Part shown: positions 35,801-56,800 of the stretch, in pieces
Layout of the letters: every line of letters starts with the position of its first letter
How positions within the stretch are numbered: position 1 is the first letter of the stretch
DNA from: Mytilus trossulus
Lineage: Eukaryota
Length of the DNA: 64,000 nucleotides
Direction: 5' to 3'
NCBI RefSeq assembly: GCF_036588685.1
Contig: NC_086377.1
Location: 744,001 to 808,000, forward strand
Made by a program: the position numbers and the translations under genes
Notes under the pieces: model-generated
Seen by the model: the letters and a program-made list of their open reading frames with translations, nothing else
Told to the model about the DNA's origin: nothing
Database searches by the model: none

Positions 35801-38800
35801 AGGGTTTATATCTAGTTACTATAGTTACCTGCATGACTTATGACCAGTGAAGCGTTACTGATGTCATCAGCTATGGAAGGTTTATATCTGGTTACTATAG
35901 TTACCTGCATGACTTATGACCAGTGAAGCGTTACTGATGTCATCAGCTATGGAGGGTTTATATCTAGTTACTATAGTTACCTGCATGACTTATGACCAGT
36001 GAAGCGTTACTGATGTCATCAGCTATGGAGGGTTTATATCTAGTTACTATAGTTACCTGCATGACTTATGACCAGTGAAGCGTTACTGATGTCATCAGCT
36101 ATGGAAGGTTTATATCTGGTTACTATAGTTACCTGCATGACTTATGACCAGTGAAGCGTTACTGATGTCATCAGCTGTGGATGGTTTATATCTGGTTACT
36201 ATAGTTACAAATGTACCTGCATGACTTATGACCAGTGAAGTGTTACTGATGTCATCAGCTATGGATGGTTTATATCTGGTTACTATAGTTACCTGCATGA
36301 CTTATGACCAGTGAAGCATTACTGATGTCATCAGCTATGGATGGTTTATATCTGGTTACTATAGTTACCTGCATGACTTATGACCAGTGAAGCGTTACTG
36401 ATGTCAACAGCTATGGATGGTTTATATCTGGTTACTATAGTTACCTGCATGACTTATGACCAGTGAAGCGTTACTGATGTCATCAGCTGTGGATGGTTTA
36501 TATCTGGTTACTATAGTTACAAATGTACCTGCATGACTTATGACCAGTGAAGTGTTACTGATGTCATCAGCTATGGATGGTTTATATCTGGTTACTATAG
36601 TTACCTGCATGACTTATGACCAGTGAAGCGTTACTGATGTCATCAGCTATGGATGGTTTACATCTGGTTACTATAGTTACCTGCATGACTTATGACCAGT
36701 GAAGCGTCACTGATGTCATCAGCTATGGAGGGTTTATATCTGTAATATTCTACCGTGAACCCTCTCACAGAACATTCTGTAGATGGATCAAAGGCACATC
36801 GTCCAATCTGTATCAATAGCTTGTTGTAACCTTTAGATTTCAAGATCTAGAAAATAAAATTAACAATAGTTCAAAATGTTATAAATGTTTTGGTAATATA
36901 CTTTCACTATCTAGTCTATATGGCATCCAGGGTTACTACATGTACAAGTAATCTTTATTTACATGAAGACAAATAGTCTTCTTTAAGTTAATTACAGTCA
37001 GGCTCATCAAAAATAAACTTACAACACCATGGCTAAAACAAAAGATACCAAACTAACAGTCAGGCTCATAGATCAAAAATAAACTAACAACACCATGGCT
37101 AAAACAAAAGATACCAAACTAACAGTCAGGCTCATCAAAAATAAACTGACAACACCATGGCTAAAACAAAAGATACCAAACTAACAGTCAGGCTCATAGA
37201 TCAAAAATAAACTAACAACACCATGGCTAAAACAAAAGATACCAAACTAACAGTCAGGCTCATCAAAAATAAACTGACAACACCATGGCTAAAACAAAAG
37301 ATACCAAACTAACAGTCAGGCTCATCAAAAATAAACTGACAACACCATGGCTAAAACAAAGGATACCTAACGAACAGTCAGGCTCACCAAAAATAAACTG
37401 ACAACACCATGGCTAAAACAAAAGATACCAAACAAACAGTCAGGCTCATAGATCTAAAATAAACTGACAACACCATGGCTAAAACAAAAGATACCAAACT
37501 AACAGTCAGGCTCATAGATAAAAAATAAACTGACAACACTATGGCTTAAACAAAAGATACCAAACTAACAGTCAGGCTCATAGATCAAAAGTAAACTGAC
37601 AACACCATGGCTAAAACAAAAGTTACCAAAGGAACAGTCAGGCTCATAGATCAAAAATAAACTGACAACACCATGGCTAAAATAGGAATAGATACCAAAC
37701 GAACAGTCAGGCTCATAGATCAAAAATAAACTGACAACACCATGGCTAAAATAGGAATCGATACCAAACGAACAGTCAGGCTCATAGATCACAAATAAAC
37801 TAACAACACCATGGCTTAAACAAAAGATACCAAACGAACAGTCAGGCTCATAGATCAAAAATAAGCTGACAACACCATGGCTAAAACAAATACCAAATGA
37901 ACAGTCAGGCTCATAGATCAAAAATAAACTGACAACACCATGACAAAAATAGAAAAAAGATACCAAACGAACAGTCAGGCTCATAGATCAAAAATAAACT
38001 GACAACACCATGGCTAAAACAAAAGATACCAAACGAACAGTCAGGCTCATAGATCAAAAATAAACTGACAACACCATGGCTAAAACAAAGGATACATAAC
38101 GAACAGTCAGGCTCATAGATCAAAAATAAACTGACAACACCATGGCTAAAACAAAGGATACCTAACGAACAGTCAGGCTCATAGATCAAAAATAAACTGA
38201 CAACACCATGGCTAAAACAAAAGATACCAAACGAACAGTCAGGCTCATAGATCAAAAATAAACTGACAACACCATGGCTAAAACAAAAGATACCAAACGA
38301 ACAGTCAGGCTCATAGATCAAAAATAAACTGACAACACCATGGCTAAAACAAAAGATATCAAACGTACAGTCAGGCTCATAGATCAAAAATAAACTGACA
38401 ACACCATGGCTAAAACAAAAGATACCAAATGAACAGTCAGGCTCATAGCATTAAGGTACAGTATCCGACAATCGATTGATTCGACAAGAGTTGATTTTTC
38501 CTTCAGGTTTTAATTCAATTCAATTAAAAAGAATTAATTGAATAGACTCATTAACGATCGATTTATTCAACGGAACTTTAATGATAGAAACGATCGATAA
38601 CGATTGAACATTGTTTGTCGATTCAATCAACTAAATGTATTAATGATGGATACTCGATTGTAACGATTGATACGATCGATAACAATTGAACGACATATGT
38701 CGAACCAATCAACTCAATGTATTTTGATTAAGACGTCACTCGATCGTAACGATCGATACGATCGATATCGATTGAACGTCAAATGTCGAATCAATCAACT

Positions 38801-41800
38801 CAATGTATTTTGATGAAGACGTCACTCGATCGTAACGATCGATACGATCGATATCGATTGAACGTTATATGTCGAATCAATCAACTCAATGTGTTTCATG
38901 AAGACTCGATTGAACGCCATATATGGAATCAATCGACTTAATTTGTTAATGGTATAAACTACTTAATAAATTTTAATAATAAAGATTTAACAAAATAAGT
39001 TGTATTACTGTATTTCCCACTTCAGCACTGATGGAGATAAACTCTATGGTAATAATATATGTCAGATTGGGTACGGAGATATTAGTATAGTGAACAGAAA
39101 ATGTACACACAATTGAAACAGATACAAAACTTGAAGCATAGGAATTTGCTGTTTCAAAGACTTTTTACACTGATAAAACATTTTTAACATTAATTCAAGT
39201 TTGAAGAAGGTTCATAGCAACAGTTTCAGGAGAGAAAATATGAATGTCACAAAAATGTGTATTGTAGTAGCCAGTTTATGACAGTAGTATATATAGATCA
39301 TTAAAATGAAGAAACTGAAGTGATTAAACAAACATGAAAATTATTATCAAATGAATATTAGATGAAAGATCGTTCAATGTGCCTGCTTGTGCTGTAGTAT
39401 ATGTAGTATATGTAAATATATGCTGGCTTAATTGCGCATATATAATTTTTTAATTAAAAAGCTGTATTAAATATAAGCCATCTAGAGTCGTAGACTGTGT
39501 TTATGTGCCTTTTACCAAGTCAGGAATATGACAGTTGTTATCCATTCGTTTGATGTGTTTGGACTTTTGATTTTGCCTTTTGATTTTGGATTTTCCTTTT
39601 GAATTTTCCTCGGAGTTCGGTATTTTTGTGTTTTTACTTTTTAGTGTCAATTTATCGCCTAGCACCAAAGTCTATGTTGTTGTGTCAGACTCCGGTTAGG
39701 GTTGAAGCAGGAACATATATATTACTGTATACTGTTCCCAGGTGGGAGTTCGGGTGACAGTAAGACTACATACGACTACTAGCGCCGTAGGCTGTGTCAA
39801 TATGCCGCCTAGCGCCGTAGGCTGTTATTATTATTATCAAATGAATATTAGAGGAAAGATCGTTCAATGTGCCTGCTTGTGCTGTAGTATATGAAGTATA
39901 TGTAAATATATGCTGGCTTAATTGCGCATATACAATTTTTTTTAAAGCTGTATTAAATATAAGCCATCTAGAGTCGTAGACTGTGTTTATGTGCCTTTTA
40001 GCGCCGTAGGCTGTGTCAATTTATCGCTTAGCACCAAAGTCTATGTTGTTGTGTCAGACTCCGGTTAGGGTTGGAGCAGGAACATATATATTACTAAATA
40101 CTGTTCCCAGGTTGGAGTTCGGGTGACAGTAAGACTGCATACGACTATTACCGCCGTAGGCTGTGTCAATATGCCGCCTAGCGCCGTAGGCTGTGTCAAT
40201 ATGCCGCCTAGCGCCATAGGCTGTGTCAATATGCCTCCTAGCGCCGTAGGCTATTATAAGTTATCTACGTTCATATCCGTAGATATGGATATTTTAACAC
40301 CCTGAAGTACCCCAGTACACCATGAGGCGTAGCAATACAATGTTCTTACCGGTTTCTAGGATATTTTTATGATTCAGGTTTTTTTTTAAACAGCATTATT
40401 TAAAAGCAAAATTAAACAAATCAACATGAAAATTTAAAAAATTCCAAACATCAATAAAATAAAAATTTGAAGCAATTCTAAAAATATCTGGAAACCTTCT
40501 CATTTTGTTTATATTAGCTATTTACCAGGGTAAATAAGATAAGATAAATCATGCAATTAACAGATTCAGATTCAATATTTTATTAGTCTCACTCCTTGCA
40601 TTACATAATATACAGTACAAACAGAGTACATAAACAATATAAAGCAGACAATTGACAAAGAAATATACAATTTCCATTCATAAATCATTGGTTTCGTTTA
40701 AGGTATATGAACACTAAATATTGCACCTATACGATTCGAAACCGCGCGCTACGAAACGTTTCCCAATGCATGAACGGACTTGCTTTTTGTGTAAAAGTGA
40801 GATGGAAACTGAGGAACATGTACTACTTGAATGTATGCTTTATGATGATTTGAGGAACGAACTTTATGAATATACAAACAGTGAGAATAAGAACTGTCAC
40901 ATGTTTACGAATCGTGAAAAACTGTCTTTTGTTTTGGGGTACCAATGTTAATTTTATAAACAAATGTGCTATAACCTGCAAACCTATTTTGGACAGGTCA
41001 CATTTTTATATATCAATAATTTTTAAACTTTTAGAAATTACATAAACTATCTATCTATCTATTTATCTACCATTCTTTTAAAATGATGAGCGACTTATAC
41101 TTGATTTGAAATCAGTTAGGTATACTCAATAACCAAAACACATTGAAATATTTTAAACTTTTTAAATAAATTTCATGAAAGATATAGTTTAACAATTTTT
41201 ATAATGGTCGAGGACTTACGTATAACAGTGCCAATACTTAAAATGCCATGCAAATACAATGGCAAATAACCAACGTGGTTTTTGTTTACTATTTGACATG
41301 CAAAAAGTACATATTATAAAATATGGGATAAATATATTTCAAGATATTTTCAGATATATATTTATTACTACTCCATTAATGATTTTATTTCATACGGTCT
41401 TATTGTCAATGCTCTCATTGTGGTCACAGTTGATCAAACAAAAATAAACTACTCGTTTATGCCTTGTCATATGTCTGGTGGAATATTTGAACCTGTTCAG
41501 TTTTTTAAAAGCCTGCTCACAACTTTCAGTGTTGCAGCCATGAATTTCACTGAATTTGTCTAGTTTTGGGTGAAATTCACATAACGGGTTATTGTTTAAA
41601 GGCATACAACAGGGTTTTGTGTGCTTCAGTACATGAAAAATGTCTACGAGAAACTGTACATCATTTAACATTTCTTCTGAACCTGCAACATTTTCCTTTA
41701 CAAGCCGACGCAAAAAAGGTTTCAACTCACAACATCTGTCATAACCGAGATACTTAATCCTTTTTTTGCAACTGTCATCCATAAAAAACATTTTACGTAA

Positions 41801-44800
41801 CAGCAAAAACACTTGTGTAAGGGATTCATGGCTGTACATCTCCGCAAAACCTACAATGACACCACATGGTCTTATTACGAAGAGCATACCAGCTGTTGTT
41901 TTGTAAAACTTGTTCAATTTCGATTTGTCTTTGCAACTTTTCACTTCTTCGTCTGTTACAATTATTCTCTCAATGCTTTCGTCGCTGTACAAACTTTCGT
42001 ATTCTAAATAAGAATAAAAATACATCTACATACATGTATCATCAATGATTGCTGTACAAACATTTGTATTCAGAATAATAAATGTGTTAATTAAATTGCT
42101 TATTACTTATTCAGGAGAACAACAAAAGTATTTTTTACAAGAAAAAAATACATGTATCATTTATTTCACAGTTTTTATACTCGTATCTTCAAGTCTAACT
42201 CTTGCAGGCTCGAGGCACCATTACATTTTTGCAAACTGTAAATGTTTATTGTATTTAACAATATTCTGTAACGATATACCGGCATATTGCTTTCATTTTA
42301 GTTAGTGTTTCTATATGAATTGGATTTTAAATAGAAAAGAATAATATTCACCTAACAAAAAGTACTATTCATCGGGCACAACATCATTTGCTTTTACATT
42401 TACATTTCTATTAAATGCAGACTTAAAACGTTTTATGTGCATTTGGTTCTTATAAATGAGTGTACTTAAAACGCTTAACTATTGCAATATTAATTCAAAC
42501 AATTGCTGATCAAAGTGTATAATATTCAACTTTTTTTACTACATTGTACTTATTATTTTGTGTATCATTAATGAGTGCCGGTTTTACAATAAGTGTCTGC
42601 TTTATACATACCTTTTAAGTATAATGGTAATTTCCGCTTCCGAGAAGACTTTCTTACAGTCATTTCATTTCCATCTTTATTTTCCTCATTTTCAACACAT
42701 TCTTGGTGATTCACACAAAATCTAGATAGACAAGAATTTAAATAATTATATTATAACCTATTATTTTTTTCATTAAATGCAGACTCATTTTGTATCGGTC
42801 TATTCAAATTTTTAAAGTAATTTGTACTTTTTTCATTTCTATTCCGTTCTATTTGATGACATTACATTTTTTGGAAGCATATTTACTTATTATTATTCAT
42901 ACATGTACTTTTAAGCAGTAATTCCACGTATTAACATTGCAATTACATTTTAATGTAAAAAAATCATATATATATTTATATAAAAACACATTGCACATAA
43001 AGCAAAAACCAATCTGATTAAAATACAGATCTTGTATCAATGCTTTGCTTACAAGGATCTGAAAACACTCCATTCTACTTTCTGTAAAATAAAGATCTCT
43101 CGGGATCCTCTGGTGTTATTGGATTGATACACACCTTCAAAGTTTGAAGGCTTAAATTTGAGTGGCTGATATAAATATAACCAGAACATAAAGTTCTGTT
43201 TTGTTTTTATGTATGATAGAACGCTACTTAGAGAAGCAGCAGTTTGTCATTTATCATCATTTATGACTCAAAGATTCTATTGAATTTATTTACAGGCTGG
43301 TAAAATTGTTGTACGGAGTTTTGCAATCATAATGCTTATAAAGTTTGAAAAATAATCGCTAAGTAGTTTCTGAGGAAAAGAAGTATGAAAATTGGACAAA
43401 CGAGAATTAACAACTTCCTTTTTTAACCAGGTATCTATTGGATTGGAACAAAACCAAAACAAATGCGGTTTAGTTTCAATGGAGATGATAACAATAAGAT
43501 TTCCAATACGCTTATAAAAAAAAAATTTAGTGGAGACAGATATAGTAAGACAAAACATACTTAACAGGCTTTTTAAATCGTCCTCCAAATCCAGGATCTT
43601 CTGGACAACAATCTTGAACACGTAGTCCTTCTGATGATAAAATCTTTTCCCCACTTTGTGAACATATGCTTCGTCTTAACTTTTCGTTACCATCAATTGT
43701 AACGTAACCTTCTGTACAACCCTTTACCGCACACGAATGATGAATCCAACTTTCTTGTTTTGCCATAAATTTCTGAAAAAATAACACATTTTTAACTATT
43801 TTCATGGTGTCATTTCTCATTTTTACCGATTTCAGGATTAATTCGACAAACTGATGTGTATACTTATCATTTAAGTACGGTTTTTGTGTCAACGGGTGTT
43901 CTGCAGTTGCACGATTTGGCATTTTATTTTAACAAAATTTAAGTTCTTATATAAAGCATGTTAACAGCAGTCATAATAGATTTTACTAATATTGATAATT
44001 AAATTATATGAAAAATGATTTGCTTAATTCATTCGAATGTAAATCATCTCCGTGTTAAAACAAAGCCATGCAATTTAAATGTATTACATGTTTAAGGCAC
44101 AGTGGTCAAACTTATTAAGAAAAAAAATGCTTTGCAAAATTTTAAATGTTTTGTTTTTACTATTAACCTATACATTTTTAAATATTTTTTGCAATATAAT
44201 ACTTACGTCAGTATATATTTTACACATTTCTTCAATATCCAACAATCCAGATTCCATAGTACTTATCGGTAATCCTATTGGAAAATAGGTGCTTACTCTG
44301 TATATAAACCAGGCTTCCTCTAAGCGTTGCGGATTTAAAACACCTTGTGTGAGCACTTGCTTTCCTCTTTGAAAATTTGACAACTGCTTTAAATGATATT
44401 CATTATTTCCGTTATGATGGTCGTTGTACACATCAGCAATCGATTCAAATGAAGCACCCATATACTGAATCTGTTTGGAACATAAATCAAGATACCTCTT
44501 AGAAAAACAGGTTTGTGAAGTGCTCAAAAAATAGTCCGTATTTTCAACATTCATGTTTCTTTTAGCACGATCGTCTTCAGTTGTTGTATAATACGACACA
44601 TTATATCTTGGTTTATACATACAAATCCGGCACTCTGACGTATATGAAGCTGCAATGTAACTACCAGTTTCGGTAAAAACAAATGGAAAACTTGGCGATG
44701 AAATAGTTGTTAGTTTACTTTTACATAATACACAATGAGTACATGGAGATTTCAAGATTATACATTTAAATCCATCCTTTGAGTTTCCTTGTTCGCGATA

Positions 44801-47800
44801 AAAAATGTCCCAATGAAAATTCTTTTCTAATAGCTCAGGATAATCATTTTTTACTATCGTATATAAGTTTACACACGTTTTCTCATCAAATAACTCAATA
44901 TTTACTTCTTTTGCTTTTCTGTCTCCTAATATTACTTTTAAATCCTGGTATTCTTTATCGGTTTTACGCAGTCTTTCGATATATTCGCTAACATATTTCC
45001 AACGGTTTGGTGTTCCTTCAAAGAAATGGAGAACAGCAAAAATAAAATTTCTAAGCGACGAATATGTCAATATATACTTCATTTTCAATTCTTTTTGTTT
45101 TCCTTTTCAAATATATCACGTCACAGGATCTCTACGTTACATGCGCTAAGACACACACTATTTTTTGGAGCGAAATTCGCTTTTCCGCAAATTCTTGTTA
45201 TATCCAACGTCATTCAATTGTTACGTCAAGAGTTTACTGTCGCAAATTTAAAACATTGAACAGACATACAAGATGGCCACCAGTACTTTACGTAAAAGAT
45301 ATAAAGAGGCACAGAAAGTTGATTTCCCTGGAATTGAAGAAACTTCTAACAGCTACATAGAGGAACTTATTATGGCACAAGCTAATGCTATTGGTTGTCC
45401 ACCGGAGTTTTTATATTTTCCATTTTTAACAACAACTGCCGGTAAGTTATTGGACATTTTATTTTTACATTTCCTATTTTTTTTCAAACAATCGACAATT
45501 ACTTAATTATAAAAAAAAAAGAACAATTAATACATTATTTATTGTGTCGCATCATAACATTTTCATACCATTCCGCAATTTATTAACGCTAGCTCTAAAA
45601 ATGAATGAAAATTTTTTTCAGCCGAAAAAGAGTAATCATACAAAATTGCCCCGATTGTTTTTTTGTTTTGTATTACAAAAAACAATTTGGTATGGAAAAC
45701 TTTTCTAATATTATTTTTTTTTCATTTCCTTACCATGTTATTGCAACTTACCATTGATAAAAAAATAAAATAAAAGAATCATATATATTAAGCGGCGGTT
45801 TAGTTGAACATTTGTTTCAGGGTTTTGTAGTGCTTGTTATGGATATTTACTAAAGGTACTGGCTACGGTTACTTCCAGGAAGTTACAACAATTATTTCTT
45901 ATTGTTACTTCCATGACTTATTGCCAAAAGGGAATTTCTGACAAGGCGCTGATTTCACACGGAATTTCGGATGTAACCTTTAGTGTGTTTTTTTCTTCTT
46001 CTGCGGTGTGGGATGTTGCGCACAACTGAATGCCAAGTAACATTCTTCTTAGTTAACGTACTCAAAGCCTGGTTTAAACAAGGTTTTAATTTATTTAGGA
46101 ATTATATGTTTATCTTTCACACGACAGGTTTTATGGGTTCTAAAAGTGTCATTGAATTTCACGAGGAATGGAAGGAACCAGCCATTATTTGGACCATTAT
46201 TGCCGCATCCAAGGGTGAAAAAAAATCACCAGCCCTTAAAAGAATCAAGGATGCTGTTACTAGGATACAGGATGCAAAACAAAAACAGTGGACCATGCAA
46301 CAAGAAACAAAGTCAGAAACACCCACCAGAAACACAAAAAGCTCCCTGCAAGTTCCTCCACAGATAATAATTGACGTTTTTTCCATGGAAGAAATGCACA
46401 GTGTTCTTTTAAGAAACAATTATCAGGTATGATAAAAAGTTAACTTCTTAATTAACAATACAATAAAATAAAATAAGTCTGAAACAACATACTTTTGCTT
46501 TATACGCATTCGTGAATTAATTTTGTTTTGTATATTGGATTATTGGATTTGTCAAACTATAATTAATCCAGAAACGACACAACATCGAGATAACAAAAAC
46601 AACATTTTAATATAACAAACTGAAAGAGAAGATAACTACAAGTTAGAATAAAATGTACAGACATTATTTTCCGTGCAGCACCAAAACTAGTAAAATGAAC
46701 ATAACTTTGATTTAATTTTCCTCAAAATGATTCATCATGTTTATTCCTGCAAACTTGATTTGCAATTCGAAGCATTTTCTGTCCTTATTATTCATAAAAA
46801 AAAAAAATCAATATTATTTATATACAATATCGGTTTTTCGTTTTTCGAATGCTATAAAAAAAAAAACAACACTGTGTCATACTTTTTTACAATTTCATAA
46901 AACTGGTTACAAAGATCTGATTTAAAAGTTTAATATAATTTATGAAAATAATCTATAATTGATCACTGTTTATAAAAAAAATCATGAAATGTGGTGTTCA
47001 CTTTATCAATTATAGGTTATAGGTATTTATGAAGAAATTAAGGTATTACACCAGTCACTAGATATTTATAAACCAGGAGGAAGTCTTGTTGATAGAAAGC
47101 AATTTCTCAATTTGAATGGAGGGTCCGCATGGGATAGAAATTTTAAAAATTCCGGATACAGTCATCTTCCAAGAACACATTTTAACCACACTGGCATGAT
47201 CCAACCAGTAATTTTGGCAGAGATGATGGATAGAGATGACTGGGATGGTTTCAATGATAGGTATTTATTTTTTTGTAATTAAATTTGTACATGAAAATTT
47301 CACCAAATATCAAATAAATATTAATTACATTAGATGTATGTTTCATTATAATACGTTATTCTGATTGGTTAATTGCACATCACATGGTATTACGTAAGCA
47401 GTTGTATGAGACAATAACATTTCATTCATGATGACACGAGGTCCCACAATAAAGTGCACAGGTGAATTTAAAAAATTAAAGTTCATGAAAATCGTGTTTT
47501 TATAATTCTAGCTAAAAAAAATGTAATTATAAGTATTGAATGCTTCTTTTTGTAACTTTATAGGGTTGTAAAAGCGTTGACGGTGCGTACATTTTTAGAA
47601 TGAAGCGCTTCAGCGCTTCATACAAAATGTACTTCGGTCAACGCTTTTACACCCCAATAAATGTGGGGGTGGTGCTAGGATGAAAAATTAGTCCTGCATT
47701 TTTTTTAGTTCAATTTCGATCCTGCCTTTTTATTTTTCTCTATATTTGGTCCTGTTTTTTTTTTAATTATCATGTGTTATTTACCCAGTTGCTCATTCTG

Positions 47801-50800
47801 TATTGTTTTAACTCGAAACTCCTGTCATACCTTTTCTTTTTTACTCAAAATTACTGTCCTGCCTTCTTTTTTAAATTTCATTCTATACCCCTATAAAAAT
47901 GGTAGCTCCATAACTACAAAGACACTGATGATAAATTCTTACTTTTATATCTTTTTGCAAATATTGCAAAACATACCATATTAATTCACAAGTTTAGTAA
48001 AGTCAAAGAGTGATTCCTTTTTGTATATACGACATTGGCACATCACTTATCATGCGTGAAAATATGAATACTTAGACTATACCATTTTACTGTATGTAAT
48101 TAAGAAGAAAACTAATTTGATTTTTCTTGCCTATAGAATGCACAACTTTTTATTTTGCTAATCAATGATAACACAGGTTTTTTTTAAACTTGAGAGCAAT
48201 GCAAAAACAAATTTGATATGTTAAAATAATATTTTATAGGTACCTTATTTCATGCCCAAAAGAGGTGATGTTTACTTCAAACATGTACAAGATACCAGTT
48301 CCAGAAAACTTAAGAAGTAGCATGGACAAGATATTTAAAGTCATTTCAGAAAAACATGAAACTGAAACAGTTTACAGATTTGATGAGGAAGCCAAGTCTG
48401 TTTTTAACAACTTCCACGACAATTATTATATAGAAAAGAAAATGCAGTTTACCGAAGATGAGAACAGAAGAGGGGTTCTTTCTAAAAGTCTTGGTTACAT
48501 TATAAGGCTTTCAGGAATTATAACAGCTGTACAAAATGCTTCAGCTGTAGTTAAAGGTATGATTTACATGTTGTCAATATGGCTTTTCTTTCAACAAGAA
48601 GTTAGATAAAAATTATTATGTTTTTGTTTCATTTATTCAAAATCTAATAATTACATTACATGTATATTTGAACATAATCCGTTATTTTGATTGGCTAACA
48701 ACAATCTCACATTATTCTTTTTAGCACAATGATATGTAACATCCATGATAGCATGTGCTTACACACAAAAATGCACAGGCAAATATAAGAAATATTTGAT
48801 AGAAATTGTTTATTCATGATCCTAGCAAACAAATGTAATTATAAGAATTGGATTACTTATTTTATAGGGTTGTAAAAGCGTTGACCGAAGTACATTTTTA
48901 GACACTTCCGCGCTTCATACAAAATGCAATCTGCATTTGATCAAAATGATGATAGAAAATTTGATTATGTGTCAAATACAGGATATATCACCTGGATGTT
49001 CAAGAAATACTCATATGAAGGAATAAATTGCCTTAAATCTACTACAAATTAATACTTTGAAATCTTTTATAACAAGTAGAAATATGAATTATTTTACAGA
49101 GGAACTGGACTTAGATGAATACAGATGGGATTGTTCAGTTTCGGCTCCTAATGTAAAGAAGGCTATAGCTCTAATGCAATACTTTATAGACACTAAATTT
49201 GCCCTACTACCTATATGTGACAGAATTGAAGAGTTTCATGAATCACAAACTCAATCAGGTGAGAATATTCAACTAAAATACAAATTGTTTATAGCTGTTC
49301 GGTGTGAGCTAATGCTCCGCGTTGAAGGCCGTACTTTTACCTATAATTGTTTACTTTTTATACATTGTGATTTGGATGGAAAGTTGTCTCATTGGCACTA
49401 ATACGACATATTATTTATATATTGAAGAGGACGTACTTATTAACAAATTTCTTACACTCTGAGGGTACCAATTAGTAATGTTTTTCAGGGCACCATACCG
49501 ATTGTGCACTTGGGATGTATTACGTTAGATTAACAGGTGGTTTAAATTGAGTTATCTTTACTTAGCACCCATCCCCTAAGAAGGCGACAATTTAAGCAGA
49601 TACAAAAAAAAAAGACTAATCGACTACTGTAATTAAATAGACAGATATAAAAGATATTTTTAAACATAGATTTATAATTTATTAATATGATTGGAATATC
49701 AGTTACTGAAATCATCAAAACGCTTTACAAATGATTTTAAAATTTATTCAATGTTTTTTTAGAAATTTCTAACGAGATGCAAATTATGCAAGACTGTGGA
49801 CAGAAGATTAAACGACTCTTGGAGTTTGAAACAGAGACCTTAGATATAACTTCCGCAATGGCGTGCAGGAATGCACTTTTCCCTGCTGTTCCCAAAGAGC
49901 AACGCGGAGGTGGTAATAATAGATTCCCGTCTTGGGCGGCGGACAAATTCTTCAAAACTGTAAGTTTTATTTTTAAGATTATTTATTAAAAAACACAGAA
50001 TTCAGTGAATTCATATTTTTCCCCCACAATACATATATCGTTATATAATGTATAGTTGTTAGTAAATTCGTACGGGATTTATTTAAGGATGTCTGCTGCT
50101 CTAATTTAAAATAATAAGGATTTCATGTGGTTGTTTAAAATGAAAACAACTTTGATATTTAAACAAAATAAAGAAATAAAATCATTAGTCTCGTGTGTAG
50201 TTTTCAAAATACGAGACATTTAGAAAATGGCGGGAAAAGGGTTTTCTTCAGACTTTACTATTTGTTAACATTGGAATTGTTTTTTACCCTTTAAACCAAG
50301 AAAAAATAACAAGGATTTCATGCCGCCGGATCACTAAATCTGAAATGATCTATTGAACAGATTTATGAAGACAAAAGTGGGGTGTCGTGTAAATTTTTTT
50401 TAATACATTTGGATGGATAAAACCTGAGAAAATCGAAAATATGACAAGAATTCAAAAACATGACCAGCAGACATCCTTAATTTGAATGAATGTTTTCATT
50501 TAAGTGTAAAACAAACAGGTCACTTATTTTCATATCGAATTTTCCTTCAGTTTCGAATACTTTAAGTGACTTGTAAATTCTAAATGATTTTAAAATTAAA
50601 TAGATCTAAATAGATGTTGCACTTTTCTCATATCTCAAAACTGTCGTGCTACTTAGGATCACATCTTATGTATGTATATACCTCATTTTATAAAGCAAAG
50701 GTATATATATAGTGCTTGGGGAAGTATGTCCATCCATTAGTTCGTCCGTCCGTTCGTTCGTTCCTTACAGTGAGTCGAGTTAGGTAGGAGTACTCGTTTA

Positions 50801-53800
50801 TATCCACAAAAAAACCTATAATCAAATGAAACTTAATTTTCGATTTTCGATTTTATAGTTCTAAATCATATCTGTGATGTTAATAAATATACTGAAAACA
50901 ATATTTTAGGTTTCTGAACTTGGATTTGGAACTATCGAAACAAGGACTCACGCATTAAACAAAACTGCTTCCTCATGTTTCCGGAAAAGGAAATATGAAG
51001 ACCTATCAGATGGATGCAAAGACATTGCCAAAAAACTCAAAATCGACGAAGACAAATATATGAATGGGTCAAAAGGTAAAATTGAAAAATTCTTACACCA
51101 CTATAAGCTTTAATAACACAAAATATACGTATAATATTTGTATTGAAACTGTTCCGATATATATCAAATGTGAAATACCACCATAAATAGGAATCTACAT
51201 GATATCATATAAAGGAGGCAAATTAATTGTGACTAGTATAATATTTTTTATGATTCTTTGTTAGTTAAACTTTGTATATTACTAGTACTTGATACGTTGT
51301 TAAAATTTAGAGAGCTGTGCATCTGGTCAGAAGCTAATACGTAAAGTCCATTGTAACATTTAATAGTGAATTTTATCCTCTTATTGATATAAGCAATGAA
51401 ACAAAATGTTGGGTATTTTTTATCTATTCCTGTATAATTTTTGTCACTATTATTTTCAGAAAAAGAAAACAAAGAGATCAGGGAACCATTAATCAACGTC
51501 ACAAACAGAGACAGCCAATCTTGAAGGACTGCATTATACTATATTCGCTTAATTTCAGAATCTAATAAAATAAATTCCATATTATACACATTATATGGTA
51601 ATATATTTGGTTAACATTGTGTTTCTGTTTCACACTTTTGTTATCTGTTGTAAAAAAGGATATGGTACGTCGTTATTTTTTTCCTCCACTACACTTTTGT
51701 AGTGTAACATGGATAAGCAACTTTGTGCATGTGCAGGATAAATTTTACAGTGTGAATTGTGTGAATTTGCTGTACACAGACAACTTTAATTACGCCTATA
51801 AATCAATTGTTAAAGATACTGGGGAAAAAACACACTTGTAAACTTGATACAAAATTAAAAAAAAAACACATGTTAATAATGCCATAAAGGGAAGATCACT
51901 TTTATTGTTGTCTTTCATCTTGAAAGTTGCAGTGAGATTTTCAACACGTGCATATCTATGGTAGCTGTAAATCTTATAGTCTGTTTCTGTGTATGTCGGC
52001 GTTCGCCTGTGTTGTAAATCTGTGTTTCTGATGTATCTTGTGGTTGGTGTTTTTTCCTCGGTTTTTGGTTTGTTTCATGGATTTGTTCCCTCTATATCGA
52101 TTTATGACTTTTTGAAAAGCGGTATACTACTGTTGCCTATATTCATGTCAGATTAAAGATTTTACCGAGCACCAGTTTGAGCAGAACTATATTAGTGATG
52201 TTACGGTTATAATTAAGGCTATGGTAAGACTGTTTTTAATATGCCATCAGGCGCCGTAGGCTGTTTCAACGTTTCAATATGCCTTTTGCCATCACAGGCT
52301 ATGCCAATGTGCCATGTAGCACCGGATGCTATGTTCTCGTGTGAATGTTATATTATTGTTATAGTTACGGTAGCGTGAGGTTGTATTAAGTATGCCATCA
52401 GACACCGTAGACTGTTACAATGTGCCGCCTAGCGACGTAGGCTGTGTCCTCGTGTATGAGTGATGTTAGGGTTATAATTAAGACTATGGTAAGACTGTTT
52501 TTAATATGCCATCAGGCGCCGTTGGCTGTTTCAATATATTATCTAAGGCCGTAGGCTGTGTCAATGTGCCTTAATTAAAGCAATGGAGAGCAAAGTTATA
52601 GTTAGGGTTATATTTAAGGTTAGGTTATGTGTCGTCATGCGCCGTATGCTTTTTCATTGTGCCATCAAGCGCCGTAGGCTATGCCAATGTGCTACCTAGC
52701 GCCGTAGGCTATGTCCTCACATAAGATTTGTTTTAGGGTTAGGGTTAGGGAAATGTAAATGTTACACCTAGTGTCATAGGCTAGGGTTAGGGTTAGGGTA
52801 ATGTCAATGTGACACCTACCGCCGTAGGCTAGGGTTAGGGTTCAGATTTGGTAAAGTTGTGACAACTTTGAAGGTTAAAGTCAAAATTATAGTTAGTGTA
52901 AGAGTAAGGCTTTATCAAATATACCATCTAGCGACGTAGGCTGACATATTACTTTGACATTGTTAGGGTTAGCCGTAGGCTGTGTCAATGTGCTTTCTAG
53001 CAATGAATTGTAAAGGTTTATTTAGGGTTAGGGTTATAGTTAAGGTTAGGGTAAGGCTGTTTTAAATATGTCATTAGGCGCCGTATGCTGTTTTAATGTA
53101 CCATCTAGCGCCGTAGGCTATGTTAATGTGCCACCTAGCGCCGTAGGCTATGTCCTCGCGTAAGAGGGGTTAGGGTTAGGGTAATGTCAATGTGACACCT
53201 AGCGCCGTAGCCTAGGGTTANNNNNNNNNNNNNNNNNNNNNNNNNNNNNNNNNNNNNNNNNNNNNNNNNNNNNNNNNNNNNNNNNNNNNNNNNNNNNNNN
53301 NNNNNNNNNNNNNNNNNNNNNNNNNNNNNNNNNNNNNNNNNNNNNNNNNNNNNNNNNNNNNNNNNNNNNNNNTTAGGGTTTGTTAAAGTTATGAAAAGGT
53401 TAAAGTAAAAATTATAGTTAGCGTAAGGGTAAGGCTTTAACAGATATATCATCTAGTGCCGTAGGCTGTGTCAATGTGCCTTCTTAGACTGTTTGTGTAG
53501 GTTGTTTGAATGTGTTTTATTGCGTCATATGTGTCTTGACATAGAGCTAGGTTAGGTTTAGAGAAAGGGTAAGGCTGTATCAAATATACTATCTAGCACC
53601 GAAGTATGTGTTAATGTACCACCTAGTGTCGTATGCTTTGTCCATGGGTTAGCATTACATCAATGTGCCATCTAGCGCGCCGTAGGCTATGTCAATGTGC
53701 CACCTAAGGCCGTAGGCTATGTCCTCGCGTAAGAGAGGTTAAGGTTATAGTTAAGGTAAGGGTAAGGGTTAGGGTTAGGGTTAGGGTTAGGGATTAGAGT

Positions 53801-56800
53801 AAGTGTACGGGTTTGAAATAGGATTTGGGTTATTGTAGTGTCAATGTGACACCTAGCGACGTAGCCTAGGGTTAGGGTAAGGGGTTTGGGTTAGGGTAAG
53901 GATAAGGGTAAGGGTTAGGGTTATGAATAAGAGTTAGAGTTAGAGTTAGGAATATGATTAGGGGTTAGGAGTTAGATCAGGGTTAGGGTTTGTTAAAGTT
54001 ATGATAAGCATGATAAGGTTAAAGTAAAAATTGTAGTAAGTGTAAGGGTAAGGCTATAACAAGTATATCATCTAGTGCCGTAGGCTGTGTCAGTGTGCCT
54101 TCTTAGTTTATTTGTGTAGGTTGTTTAAATGTGTTTTATTGCGTCATATATGTCTTGGTAAAGAGCTAGGTTAGGTTTAGGGAATGGTTAAGGCTGTATC
54201 GATAAGATCGTTCTCTGTTTATTATATGCATATACAATTGACTGAGTTGATTATATTGATTAACCGTGGCAATATCGATACTACCAAGCTCCAATAAAAA
54301 TTTTGAATATACAGTTGACCGAGTTGATTATATTGATCAACCGTGACACAATCGTATCGATTGTACTCGATCGATACGATCGTATTCCACTTAAAATATG
54401 AATATACAGTTGACTAAGTTGATTGTATTGTTCAACTGTGGCACAATCGTATCGATTGTACACGATTGATACGATCGTGTTCCATTTAAATATGAATATC
54501 AAAATTGACTGAGTTGATTGTATTGATCAACTGTGGCACAATCGTATCGATTGTACACGATCGATACGATCGTGTTCCACTTAAAATATGGATATACAGT
54601 TGACTGACTTGATTATATTGATTAACCATGCCACATTGATCTTTACTTAAAATATGAAATTACAGTTCGGAATGTCTAGTTTTGTGTACACTGAACCTAC
54701 GCAAGGCCTACATCGACCATCGACTGCATGTAGACAAAACATGATTTAAACTACATGTAAACCTTGAGTTTTATCAATGGGAACGTAATTATGTTTAGTT
54801 TATATGTGAGTTACACTAACACAACACCGAGTTTAGGTCAATGTGAACACGGCCTAAGGTTATAAGAATATGTATTAAAATACAGAGTTGACTGAGTTGA
54901 CCATATTTATCAACATTCATAATTAGTTTGTAATTTTAATGAAGAGTTGACTGAGTTGAATAAATTTATCAACTGTGGAACAATTGTAACGATTCAATAC
55001 GATCGATACGATCGTGCAACGTTTTAAATATAAAAAAAAAGGGTTGACTGAGTTGAATAAATTGTTCAACTGTGGCACAATCGTAATGCTTGAATACGAT
55101 CGATACGATCGTGCAACGTTTTAAATATATAAAAAAAATAGAGTTGATTAGATTGATCAACTGTGGCACAATCGTAATGATTGAATACGATAGATACGTT
55201 CCTGCAACGTTTAAAATATAAAAATATAACAAAAATAGAGTTGAATGAGTTGATTAGATTGATCAACTGCGGCACAATCGTAATGATTGAATACGATCGA
55301 TACGATCGTGCAACGTTTAAAATATAAAAAAATAGAGTTGACTGAGTTGAATAAATTGTTCAACTGTGGCACAATCGTAACGATTGAATACGATCGATAC
55401 GATCGTGCAACGTTTAAAATATAAAAAAATAGAGTTGACTGAGTTGAATAAATTGTTCAACTGTGGCACAATCGTAACGATTGAATACGATCGATACGAT
55501 CGTGCAACGTTTAAAATATAAAAAAATAAAGTTGACTGAGTTGAATAACTTGTTCAACTGTGGCACAATCGTAACGATTGAATACGATAGATACGATCGT
55601 GCAACGTTTAAAATATAAAAAAAATAGAGTTGACCGAGTTGAATAAATTGTTCAACTGTTCCACAATCGTAATGATTGAATACGATCGATACGATCGTGC
55701 AACGTTTTAAATATATAAAAAAAATAGAGTTGACTGAGTTGATTAGATTGATCAACTGTGGCACAATCGTAACGATTGAATACGATAGATACGATCGTGC
55801 AACGTTAAAAAAGAAAGAGTTGACTGAGTTGATTCAATTGATCAACTGTGGCACAATCGTAATAATTGAATACGATCGATACGATCGTGCAACGTTTAAA
55901 ATATAAAAAAAATAGAGTTGACTGAGTTGAATAAATTGTCCAACTGTGGCACAATTGTAACGATTGAATACGATCGATACGATCGTGCAACGTTTAAAAT
56001 ATAAAAAAAAATAGAGTTGACTGAGTTGATTAGATTGATCAACTGTGGCACAATCGTAACGATTGAATACGATCGATACGATCGTGCAACGTTTAAAATA
56101 TAAAAAATAGAGTTGACTGAGTTGATTCAATTGATCAACTGTGGCACAATCGTAACGATTGAATACGATCGATACGATCGTGCAACGTTTAAAATATAAA
56201 AAAATAGAGTTGACTGAGTTGAATAAATTGATCAACTGTGACACAATCGTAACGATTGAATACAATCGATACGATCGTGCAACGTTTAAAATATAAAAAA
56301 AAATAGAGTTGACTGAGTTGATTAATCCAGACACTAAGAAAGTTTGTAAATTTGGTACAACAATTGATTGAATCGACACATTGACACGATCGAATACAGT
56401 TGACAAGATAATTATACTATAAAAAAAATATTGTCGAATCAATCGATTGTCGAATACTGTACCATACTCGCTCATAGATCAAAAATAAACTGACAACACC
56501 ATGGCTAAAACAAAAGATACCAAACGAACAGTCAGGCTCATAGATCAAAAATAAACTGACAACACCATGGCTAAAACAAAAGATACCAAACGAACAGTCA
56601 GGCTCATAGATCAAAAATAAACTAACAACACCATGGCTAAAACAAAGATACCAAACTAACAGTCAGGCTCATAGATCAAAAATAAACTGACAACACCATG
56701 GCTAAAACAAAAGATACCAAACTAACAGTCAGGCTCATAGATAAAAAATAGACTGACAACACCATGGCTAAAACAAAACATACCAAATGAACAGTCAGGC

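What the first reader, a model, noticed from the sequence alone, without database searches (positions are those of the whole stretch)
45273..51524. Intron-rich eukaryotic DUF3987/MCM-like ATPase with non-canonical Walker motifs
Seen: 8 exons absent as a whole from the ORF track. Walker A-like AASKGEKKS and Walker B-like IGIYEE (E in place of D), Arg-finger-like DGFNDRYL, an IIRLS stretch resembling MCM sensor 2, and a ~130-aa C-terminal extension ending in basic FRKRKY. Seven spliceosomal introns show long residence in eukaryotes rather than contamination. Inference: an oligomeric DNA-dependent ATPase with a possible C-terminal winged helix and NLS.
Basis: partly seen in the sequence, partly recalled or inferred. 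Interest (0 to 1): 0.8.

Follow-up and report, generated by a model that had tools for sequence, protein, structure and literature searches.

The report
Transposon-borne MCM-like helicase gene
A real, spliced and expressed eight-exon gene for a phage-type (DUF3987, MCM-like) helicase sits head-to-head with the transposase inside an 18-kb jumping element of an animal-like genome; this pairing is not described in the papers I could search.

Summary
The + strand gene 45273-51524 has eight exons and seven GT-AG introns (538 codons). Transcript-like contigs from three studies carry every junction. Exons 1-7 tile one protein-family profile in order. Pfam calls DUF3987 on exons 2 and 4.

A full-length database homologue (P0050) folds as an MCM-type AAA+ domain (Z 17.6 to archaeal and eukaryotic MCM). 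Its closest structural kin are tailed-phage DUF3987 helicases and primase-helicases (Foldseek E 1e-18). Its C-terminal domain is a winged helix.

The "non-canonical" Walker A is conserved across the eukaryotic clade and resembles the MCM type. Only the D-to-E change in Walker B is specific to this genome's lineage.

The gene belongs to an 18-kb KDZ (Zisupton-like) DNA transposon (38449-56469) with about 33-bp inverted ends and 8-bp target duplications. Three full copies exist, each with its own target duplication. One copy has diverged to saturated synonymous sites but keeps the same exons and the same head-to-head transposase. Selection is strongly purifying.

My best reading is an ATP-driven DNA motor that serves the element's transposition. 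That step is inferred, not shown. The FRKRKY "NLS" is more likely the wing of the winged helix. The scan also noted the whole element as a separate finding (s1-826600).

The parts
45273..45441 (+). Exon 1 (ATG; N-terminal helices; ends in phase 1)
   Evidence: Sequence and GT donor. Joint 45441|46128 in contigs of X1, X2 and X4. Matches family profile positions 8-41, E 3.6e-10.
46128..46426 (+). Exon 2: first core strand, P-loop (AASKGEKKS, 46202-46228) and a lineage-variable insert
   Evidence: Pfam DUF3987 E 2.1e-6, profile 17-76. Family profile 43-130, E 2.7e-28. Joints on both sides in three runs.
47016..47260 (+). Exon 3: Walker B (IGIYEE, 47019-47036), hairpin ahead of the sensor-1 strand (SAWDRNFKN, 47124-47150), sensor-1-like GMIQP (47193-47207), DGFND (47244-47258)
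   Evidence: Pfam DUF3987 profile 186-229. Family profile 131-207, E 6.5e-24. 91% aa identity to the C10 copy although pS is 0.92. Secondary-structure placement comes from the P0050 model.
48240..48556 (+). Exon 4: completes the invariant Arg codon (47259-60|48240, Arg-finger candidate) and encodes the lid helices with ENRRG (48460-48474) and IIRLS (48499-48513)
   Evidence: Pfam DUF3987 E 1e-6, profile 244-333. Family profile 209-310, E 7.6e-38. 65 relatives in the 1.84-billion-protein library. This Arg is invariant in alignment A1.
49100..49258 (+). Exon 5: end of the lid and a variable linker
   Evidence: Family profile 318-351, E 1.7e-8. Joints in X4 record 19. It is the least conserved exon, 46% identical to the C10 copy.
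49763..49959 (+). Exon 6: first half of the C-terminal winged-helix domain
   Evidence: Family profile 372-427, E 3.3e-13. Joint 49959|50910 in three runs. Domain model pLDDT 92.9, and the top structural matches are all winged-helix proteins.
50910..51075 (+). Exon 7: second half of the winged helix (LGFG turn; FRKRKY at 50979-50996 on the wing strand) plus two helices
   Evidence: Family profile 429-481, E 1.3e-16. The loose ends of contigs at 51075 read the first letters of exon 8.
51460..51524 (+). Exon 8: short acidic/polar tail and the TGA stop
   Evidence: AG acceptor and reading frame. Contig overhangs at 51075 match 51460 onward. It is not conserved in the family.
41390..45088 (-). Divergently transcribed KDZ transposase gene (exon ORFs 44168-45088, 43527-43922, 41390-42025)
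   Evidence: Pfam KDZ PF18758 E 6.6e-11, 42.8 bits against a cut-off of 26.6, on 41390-42025. Weak CxC5 hit on 44168-45088. The same head-to-head order is found in the C8 and C10 copies.
45089..45272 (.). 184-bp spacer between the first exon ORF of the transposase gene and the DUF3987 ATG (candidate two-way promoter; inferred)
   Evidence: Coordinates. Contigs of X1 begin at 45232. Promoter function was not tested.
38441..38487 (.). Left 8-bp target duplication GCTCATAG (38441-38448), element start CATTAA (38449) and left inverted end (38455-38487)
   Evidence: The C8, C13 and C10 copies share the same terminus.
56431..56477 (.). Right inverted end (56431-56463), element end (56469) and right 8-bp target duplication GCTCATAG (56470-56477)
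   Evidence: The C8 copy has TSD TTAAATAT and the C10 copy has ATAAATCA at the equivalent places.

Best explanation
SHOWN. The gene is an intact, spliced and transcribed member of the DUF3987 family. DUF3987 is the superfamily-6, MCM-like AAA+ helicase family known from phages and prokaryotic mobile elements. The product has short N-terminal helices, an MCM-type AAA+ core with a beta-hairpin ahead of the sensor-1 strand, a helical lid and a C-terminal winged helix. It has no primase domain and no MCM-type N-terminal domain. It is one of only two genes of an 18-kb KDZ (Zisupton-like) cut-and-paste transposon (38449-56469) with about 33-bp inverted ends and 8-bp target duplications. It lies head-to-head with the transposase. 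Both genes have been kept together under strong purifying selection in two element lineages.

INFERRED. The protein assembles into a ring and uses ATP to bind, melt or translocate on the element's DNA. Its P-loop Lys-Ser, Walker B Glu-Glu, sensor-1 Gln and invariant Arg finger are all in place. The winged helix would dock it onto DNA or onto the transposase. The motor would therefore be a required helper of KDZ transposition, for example in opening the ends, in assembling or dismantling the transpososome, or in a replication- or repair-coupled step. It would not be a host gene or a passive passenger.
For: Gene model and expression.

Family: Pfam DUF3987 on exons and on full-length kin (P0050, E 2.4e-30). 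PHROG 2373 'DNA helicase', E 5e-18.

Fold: MCM AAA+ at Z 17.6 and Foldseek E 3.5e-5. Phage DUF3987 helicases and primase-helicases at E 1e-18. Winged helix.

Catalytic residues conserved in the transposon-type subgroup.

Family biochemistry: a PriCT-DUF3987 protein is an oligomeric 5'-3' helicase that depends on Walker A and B (PMC11724360). DUF3987 is classed as SF6, MCM-related, with a C-terminal wHTH (PMC4889955).

Transposon context: KDZ Pfam hit. The identity between the C5 and C8 copies ends exactly at the termini. TIRs and three different 8-bp TSDs. 8-bp TSDs are the Zisupton hallmark (PMC12730594).

Selection: one nonsynonymous change in about 1277 sites, against 1.38% intron divergence. 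pN 0.227 against a saturated pS of 0.84, with identical exon borders and the same paired transposase in the C10 lineage.
Against: No activity, oligomer or interaction was tested.

The fold was predicted for a homologue, not for the window protein, because the exons were not joined.

The Walker A lacks both canonical glycines, and the first Walker B acidic residue is Glu rather than Asp, so ATPase activity could be weak or lost.

The transcript contigs carry A at 49905, like the C8 copy, so expression cannot be assigned to this copy in particular.

The runs are only guessed to be RNA.

The KDZ-DUF3987 link is shown in one genome only, because the tool for neighbouring genes elsewhere was closed.

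KDZ elements in fungi carry a non-essential passenger gene (TET/JBP), so a second gene need not take part in transposition.
Confidence: 0.6

Rival explanations
1. The protein is an AAA+ partner that regulates rather than unwinds. It would be an ATP-dependent DNA-binding switch that chooses targets or activates the transposase, in the way MuB, TnsC and IstB act for Mu, Tn7 and IS21. It might have little or no helicase activity.
For: It is encoded next to a DDE-type transposase and co-inherited with it. The P-loop lacks both canonical glycines and Walker B reads EE. There is a winged helix for DNA contact. The element has no primase or polymerase gene that a replicative helicase would serve: apart from the two genes, the element's ORFs of 110 aa or more lie in its tandem repeats.
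Against: The closest folds are replicative helicases, namely phage DUF3987 and MCM, not the DnaC/IstB or MuB clades. The hairpin ahead of sensor 1, with conserved W/R/K residues, and a full catalytic set are retained in the transposon-type subgroup. The one DUF3987 protein that has been assayed is a true helicase.
Confidence: 0.2
2. It is an accessory gene that helps the element in some way other than the transposition chemistry. It might replicate or maintain excised copies, or counter host silencing or repair, much as TET/JBP genes ride on fungal KDZ elements.
For: KDZ transposons are known to carry accessory genes (PMC12730594). In prokaryotes, DUF3987 helicases serve element replication together with primases.
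Against: The element has no primase or polymerase partner. The gene pair and its order are conserved across lineages with saturated dS, and constraint is very strong (91% aa identity in exon 3 at pS 0.92). That fits a core function better than an optional passenger. The only copy seen without the gene (C13) is a truncated remnant.
Confidence: 0.12
3. It is a domesticated host gene or part of a segmental duplication, not a transposon gene.
For: The copy number is low: three intact copies. The gene has introns and is steadily expressed. A related subgroup in other invertebrates looks single-copy and host-like. It includes unionid mussel proteins with Q-rich inserts, a C-terminal KxEP motif and degenerate motifs.
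Against: Identity between the C5 and C8 copies stops exactly at the inverted ends. Each of the three full copies has its own perfect 8-bp target duplication. Truncated and decayed copies exist on further chromosomes.
Confidence: 0.04

Closest known systems
DUF3987 (PF13148) helicases of tailed phages and prokaryotic mobile elements, e.g. the PriCT-DUF3987 helicase AgaPH
   Same: Significant Pfam and PHROG matches. The closest predicted structures (E 1e-18). An AAA+ core with Walker A Lys-Ser/Thr, Walker B, an Arg finger and a C-terminal winged helix. Carried by a mobile element.
   Different: It is eukaryotic, with seven spliceosomal introns. It has no fused or neighbouring primase (AEP, DnaG or PriCT). 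Its partner is a KDZ DDE-type transposase. The P-loop has Lys/Arg where the second glycine normally sits. Walker B is EE in this lineage.
MCM2-7 / archaeal MCM (superfamily 6 replicative helicase)
   Same: The AAA+ domain superposes at Z 17.6 over 272 residues. There is a hairpin ahead of the sensor-1 strand. The P-loop has a non-glycine before the Lys, and an Arg lies just before the fifth strand, as in MCM (the MCM side of this comparison rests on my own knowledge). A C-terminal winged helix is present.
   Different: No Pfam MCM hit. No N-terminal OB-fold/zinc domain. Sequence identity is only 12-18%. It is not part of the host replisome.
Two-gene DNA transposons with an NTPase partner (Mu MuA/MuB, Tn7 TnsB/TnsC, IS21 IstA/IstB; in eukaryotes Helitron Rep-helicase)
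   Same: A transposase and a P-loop/AAA+ motor are encoded together and inherited as one unit.
   Different: The motor comes from a different AAA+ clade (MCM-like, not DnaC/IstB-, MuB- or Pif1-like). The transposase family (KDZ) is eukaryotic. No functional link has been shown yet.
KDZ (Kyakuja-Dileera-Zisupton) transposons, especially Zisupton
   Same: A KDZ transposase domain, terminal inverted repeats, 8-bp target duplications, and the capacity to carry a second gene.
   Different: The described second genes are TET/JBP dioxygenases in fungi. An MCM-like helicase partner is not mentioned in any paper I could search.

Membership tests
DUF3987 (PF13148) | Score over the Pfam gathering cut-off (27 bits) | tested here: met
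   Exon 2 alone scores 27.6 bits and exon 4 alone 28.6 bits. Exon 3 scores 13.5 bits at colinear positions. Full-length kin score up to 106 bits. The joined protein was not scored.
DUF3987 (PF13148) | [quoted passage not shown] | tested here: met
   The Lys-Ser of the P-loop and the second (catalytic) Glu are present. Both glycines of the canonical pattern are replaced (A....KKS) and Asp is replaced by Glu. The pattern is as stated in PMC11724360. So the feature is met in a variant form.
DUF3987 (PF13148) | [quoted passage not shown] | tested here: met
   The C-terminal domain of homologue P0050 was modelled with window exons 6 and 7 as alignment rows (pLDDT 92.9). All top matches are winged-helix proteins. 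The scores are only middling: Foldseek E 0.034, VIA Z up to 7.1.
DUF3987 (PF13148) | Association with an AEP or DnaG primase (fused or adjacent) | tested here: not met
   There is no primase domain in the protein. In the 18-kb element, the only ORFs of 110 aa or more outside the two genes lie in its tandem repeats. This association is usual in phages but does not define the family.
DUF3987 (PF13148) | ATP-dependent 5'-3' helicase activity, oligomeric state | not testable with these tools
   Known for AgaPH only.
MCM (PF00493) | Sequence match to the MCM AAA+ profile | tested here: not met
   No MCM hit at E <= 0.1 for eight homologues, or at E <= 1 for the exons. No MCM chain appears in a profile search of PDB sequences.
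MCM (PF00493) | MCM-type AAA+ fold | tested here: met
   Z 17.6, rmsd 3.6 A, 272 residues against SsoMCM and Mcm2-7 subunits.
MCM (PF00493) | N-terminal OB-fold/zinc domain | tested here: not met
   Only about 65 residues of helices precede the AAA+ core in the model. The structural alignment starts at residue 32.
KDZ/Zisupton transposon (as the carrier of the gene) | KDZ transposase domain, TIRs and 8-bp TSDs | tested here: met
   PF18758 E 6.6e-11. TIR of about 33 bp. TSDs GCTCATAG, TTAAATAT and ATAAATCA at three copies. The 8-bp TSD is as given in PMC12730594.
IstB/MuB/TnsC-type transposition ATPases | Homology to those AAA+ clades | tested here: not met
   None of them appears among the listed structural matches, which are MCM and phage DUF3987. 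Only the gene arrangement is analogous.

The most novel reading that the evidence does not exclude
Animal KDZ/Zisupton-type transposons are two-component machines: a DDE-type transposase plus an MCM-like ring helicase acquired from a phage or plasmid replication module. The helicase would be mechanistically required, either to melt the ends or to couple excision or integration to DNA synthesis. That would be a eukaryotic counterpart of the bacterial transposase-plus-AAA+ systems, and the first cut-and-paste eukaryotic transposon family that depends on an SF6 helicase. A derived, single-copy branch with degenerate ATPase motifs may have been domesticated in other invertebrates.
Probability: 0.3. 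Interest if true: 0.8.

Novelty: new variant of a known kind. Interest (0 to 1): 0.6.

Why it matters
DUF3987 helicases have been described only in phages and prokaryotic mobile elements. A 2016 survey found their SF6 kin in bacteriophages and archaeal viruses but none in eukaryotic viruses. Here one sits in a eukaryote, with old introns and under strong selection, as the fixed partner of a KDZ transposase. The biochemistry of KDZ transposition is hardly known. A conserved ring-helicase partner gives a concrete, testable handle on it. It also adds a case of a prokaryote-type replication module being reused by a eukaryotic transposon, and it points to possible host domestications.

Tried and rejected
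Tools and searches that gave nothing:
- The protein atlas would not read a new sequence. A stored homologue only showed a eukaryotic (Rotifera-rich) DUF3987 cluster and then bacterial ones.
- The word-based protein search gave 2-3 hits only, both with P0050 and with the alignment.
- Cluster look-ups gave names only for two unionid mussel proteins.
- tblastn of P0050 against phage genomes found nothing.
- A profile search of PDB sequences found nothing real.
- Iyer et al. 2014, the paper that defines KDZ, is not held.
- Literature searches found no paper linking KDZ/Zisupton with DUF3987 or an MCM-like helicase.

Readings rejected:
- Gene conversion as the reason for 91% identity in exon 3: synonymous sites there are saturated.
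- A segmental duplication: the copies have distinct TSDs.
- Contamination: the gene has introns, and the window lies in an 88-Mb contig.

Exons were searched one by one, and folds were made from database homologues. I could not do a residue-level superposition on MCM, so the sensor-2 residue stays unassigned.


Full report
CONTEXT. The window is G000:C5:744001-808000 of a 1.3-Gb, 541-contig eukaryotic assembly with about 33% GC. The only named relatives of the protein are from freshwater mussels.

OBSERVATION. I rebuilt the gene by hand from the sequence and checked it with a script.
- The exons are 45273-45441, 46128-46426, 47016-47260, 48240-48556, 49100-49258, 49763-49959, 50910-51075 and 51460-51524.
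- All seven introns are GT-AG. The CDS is 1617 nt, or 538 codons before TGA.
- Each exon was searched by itself, and that joined step is left out of this work.
- Pfam finds DUF3987 on exon 2 (E 2e-6), exon 4 (E 1e-6) and weakly on exon 3, at colinear profile positions 17-76, 186-229 and 244-333.
- Against a profile of 19 homologues (A1), exons 1-7 hit consecutive positions 8-41, 43-130, 131-207, 209-310, 318-351, 372-427 and 429-481, with E from 7e-38 to 2e-8. The splice model therefore yields a complete, ordered family member.

EXPRESSION. Twenty-four public runs hold about 0.2-0.4 of the sampled words of a 6-kb stretch whose exons make up about a quarter of it.
- Contigs of X1, X2 and X4 (three studies, two organism labels) lie on the exons and jump across every intron at the predicted GT..AG borders.
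- One 1591-nt contig of X4 covers exons 1 to 7 and continues. Contig overhangs at 51075 read the first letters of exon 8.
- The large DNA-like run X19 covers the introns and has none of these joints.
- Caveats: the 'RNA' label of these runs is a guess. The contigs read A at 49905, as the C8 copy does, so expression belongs to the element family rather than provably to this copy.

RELATIVES. Exon 4 alone finds 65 proteins at E <= 0.001 among 1.84 billion, most of them exon-sized fragments from long eukaryote-like contigs.
- The full-length kin fall into two groups.
- Group (a) includes P0050, P0080, P0010, P0011 and others, some of which belong to multi-member clusters. The window protein groups with these. 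They keep [AG]xxKGx[KR]K[ST] in the P-loop, DE (here EE) in Walker B, a W/R/K-rich hairpin, IQP on the sensor-1 strand, an invariant Arg in D/S-R-x-L, and RR...LSK..GQ..RLA in the lid.
- Group (b) includes two unionid mussel proteins annotated 'DUF3987 domain-containing', plus P0017, P0027, P0053 and others. They have long Q-rich inserts and a C-terminal KxEP motif, and they have lost the hairpin and several catalytic positions. They look like host genes.
- All 19 share the C-terminal domain.
- The ESM Atlas lists a eukaryotic (Rotifera-rich) DUF3987 cluster. Eukaryotic members are therefore already in databases, although none of the 13 papers that mention DUF3987 deals with a eukaryote.

FOLD. 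P0050 is 40/82, 41/81 and 32/96 identical to exons 2, 3 and 4. It was modelled with alignment A1 and gave pLDDT 79.7.
- Foldseek against the PDB returns only MCM subunits at the top (E 3.5e-5), with one plasmid replication protein (PriRep1) lower down.
- VIA-align gives Z 17.6, rmsd 3.6 A and 272 residues for model residues 32-363 against the AAA+ domain of SsoMCM and Mcm2-7.
- Against viral models, the best matches are tailed-phage DUF3987 helicases and primase-helicase fusions, down to E 1e-18. None of the rows that carry a name is a eukaryotic virus.
- PHROG 2373 'DNA helicase' matches at E 5e-18.
- In the model, the P-loop follows the first core strand. DE ends the third strand. A two-strand hairpin precedes the sensor-1 strand. 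The invariant Arg sits just before the next strand. The RR...RLA segment forms the long lid helix.
- The C-terminal 113 residues were modelled alone, with window exons 6 and 7 as separate alignment rows, and gave pLDDT 92.9 with H-H-S-H-H-S-S topology. All top matches are winged-helix proteins of the MarR, PadR, ArsR, Z-alpha, TFE and ESCRT-II kinds, at modest scores (E 0.034; Z up to 7.1).
- FRKRKY aligns with the last strand, the wing, so it is more likely a DNA-contact or structural element than an NLS.

LITERATURE. DUF3987 was assigned to SF6, distantly related to MCM, with a C-terminal wHTH and usual linkage to primases. Divergent SF6 members were found 'not in eukaryotic viruses' (PMC4889955). 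A PriCT-DUF3987 protein is an oligomeric 5'-3' helicase that needs Walker A and B (PMC11724360). By my own knowledge, MCM P-loops also carry a non-glycine before the Lys, so the 'non-canonical' Walker A is an MCM-like, clade-wide trait.

GENOMIC SETTING. The minus-strand neighbour has a KDZ transposase domain (PF18758, E 6.6e-11) and a weak CxC5 hit.
- A second copy on contig C8 matches the window only from 38445 to 56463, at 96-98.8% identity.
- The ends are about 33-bp inverted repeats.
- The element (38449-56469) is flanked by GCTCATAG on both sides. The C8 copy is flanked by TTAAATAT. A much more diverged copy of about 25 kb on C10 is flanked by ATAAATCA.
- Eight-bp duplications and TIRs are the Zisupton pattern (PMC12730594).
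- A C13 copy is truncated and lacks the helicase gene. Further copies on C5 and C6 are decayed.
- The C10 element has the same seven exon borders (exons 1-7) and the same head-to-head transposase.

SELECTION.
- Window against C8: exons differ at 3/1617 sites (one nonsynonymous, two synonymous) and introns at 57/4141. Fisher p is 8e-6.
- Window against C10: pN is 0.227 and pS is 0.84, which is saturated, with no stops. Exon 3 is 91% identical in protein at pS 0.92.

INTERPRETATION. Shown: a real, expressed DUF3987/MCM-like AAA+ protein with a winged helix, which is an integral and selected gene of a mobile KDZ element. Inferred: it is an ATP-driven ring motor that works with the transposase. 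The rivals are a MuB/TnsC/IstB-like regulator, an accessory function, and a domesticated gene. They are weighed in their own sections.

LIMITS. There is no biochemistry and no multimer model. The sensor-2 residue is unassigned.

Noticed in passing
L001-L005 (G000:C5:87323918-87324424, C1:62257611-62258096, C27:2052746-2053231, C9:31732145-31732618, C5:48974926-48975240): A second, distant DUF3987 lineage in the same genome, with long uninterrupted ORFs (up to 279 aa, Pfam 42-51 bits). It is only about 21-23% identical to this family. Fragments resembling the second half of exon 3 lie within about 20 kb of two of these loci (C1:62275241, C27:2034786).
   Followed up: partly
proteins P0024, P0077, P0014, P0017, P0027, P0053, P0029, P0025: A subgroup of homologues, including unionid mussel proteins, has Q-rich inserts, a C-terminal KxEP-type motif, degenerate Walker B and sensor positions, and no hairpin. 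They belong to clusters of one or two members. They are possibly domesticated host genes derived from the transposon helicase.
   Followed up: partly
window 47150-47750, 48550-48950, 49150-49550, 49950-50550: Very high-copy repeats sit inside introns 3, 4, 5 and 6; depth reaches 1e5-1e6 in the DNA-like run. A shared short element (ATAGGGTTGTAAAAGCGTTGAC...) occurs in introns 3 and 4 at about 47560 and 48866. These are MITE-like insertions within the transposon.
   Followed up: no
window 40721-40951 (+): A short ORF with a zf-RVT (reverse-transcriptase zinc-binding) match (E 1.5e-4) inside the element, downstream of the transposase gene. It is probably a remnant of a nested retroelement.
   Followed up: no
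window 38385-38440 and 56486-56530: The same stretch of about 45 bp (CAAAAATAAACTGACAACACCATGGCTAAAACAAAAGATACCAA) lies on both sides of the element, outside the TSDs. The element seems to have landed inside another repeat.
   Followed up: no
G000:C13:2227600-2233000 (L029/L030): A truncated copy of the element. It keeps the left end and the 3' part of the KDZ gene (99.5% protein identity to the window's KDZ core exon) but has no DUF3987 gene.
   Followed up: partly
window 54900-56470: A tandem array of about 97-bp units fills the right sub-terminal part of the element and produces spurious long ORFs on the minus strand. It is more diverged between copies (88-92%) than the rest of the element.
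   Followed up: no
window 49905: All four runs laid, including the DNA-like one, read A where the window has C. This is a synonymous CGC/CGA difference, and the C8 copy also has A. The window copy may carry a private variant, or reads may derive from the other copy.
   Followed up: partly
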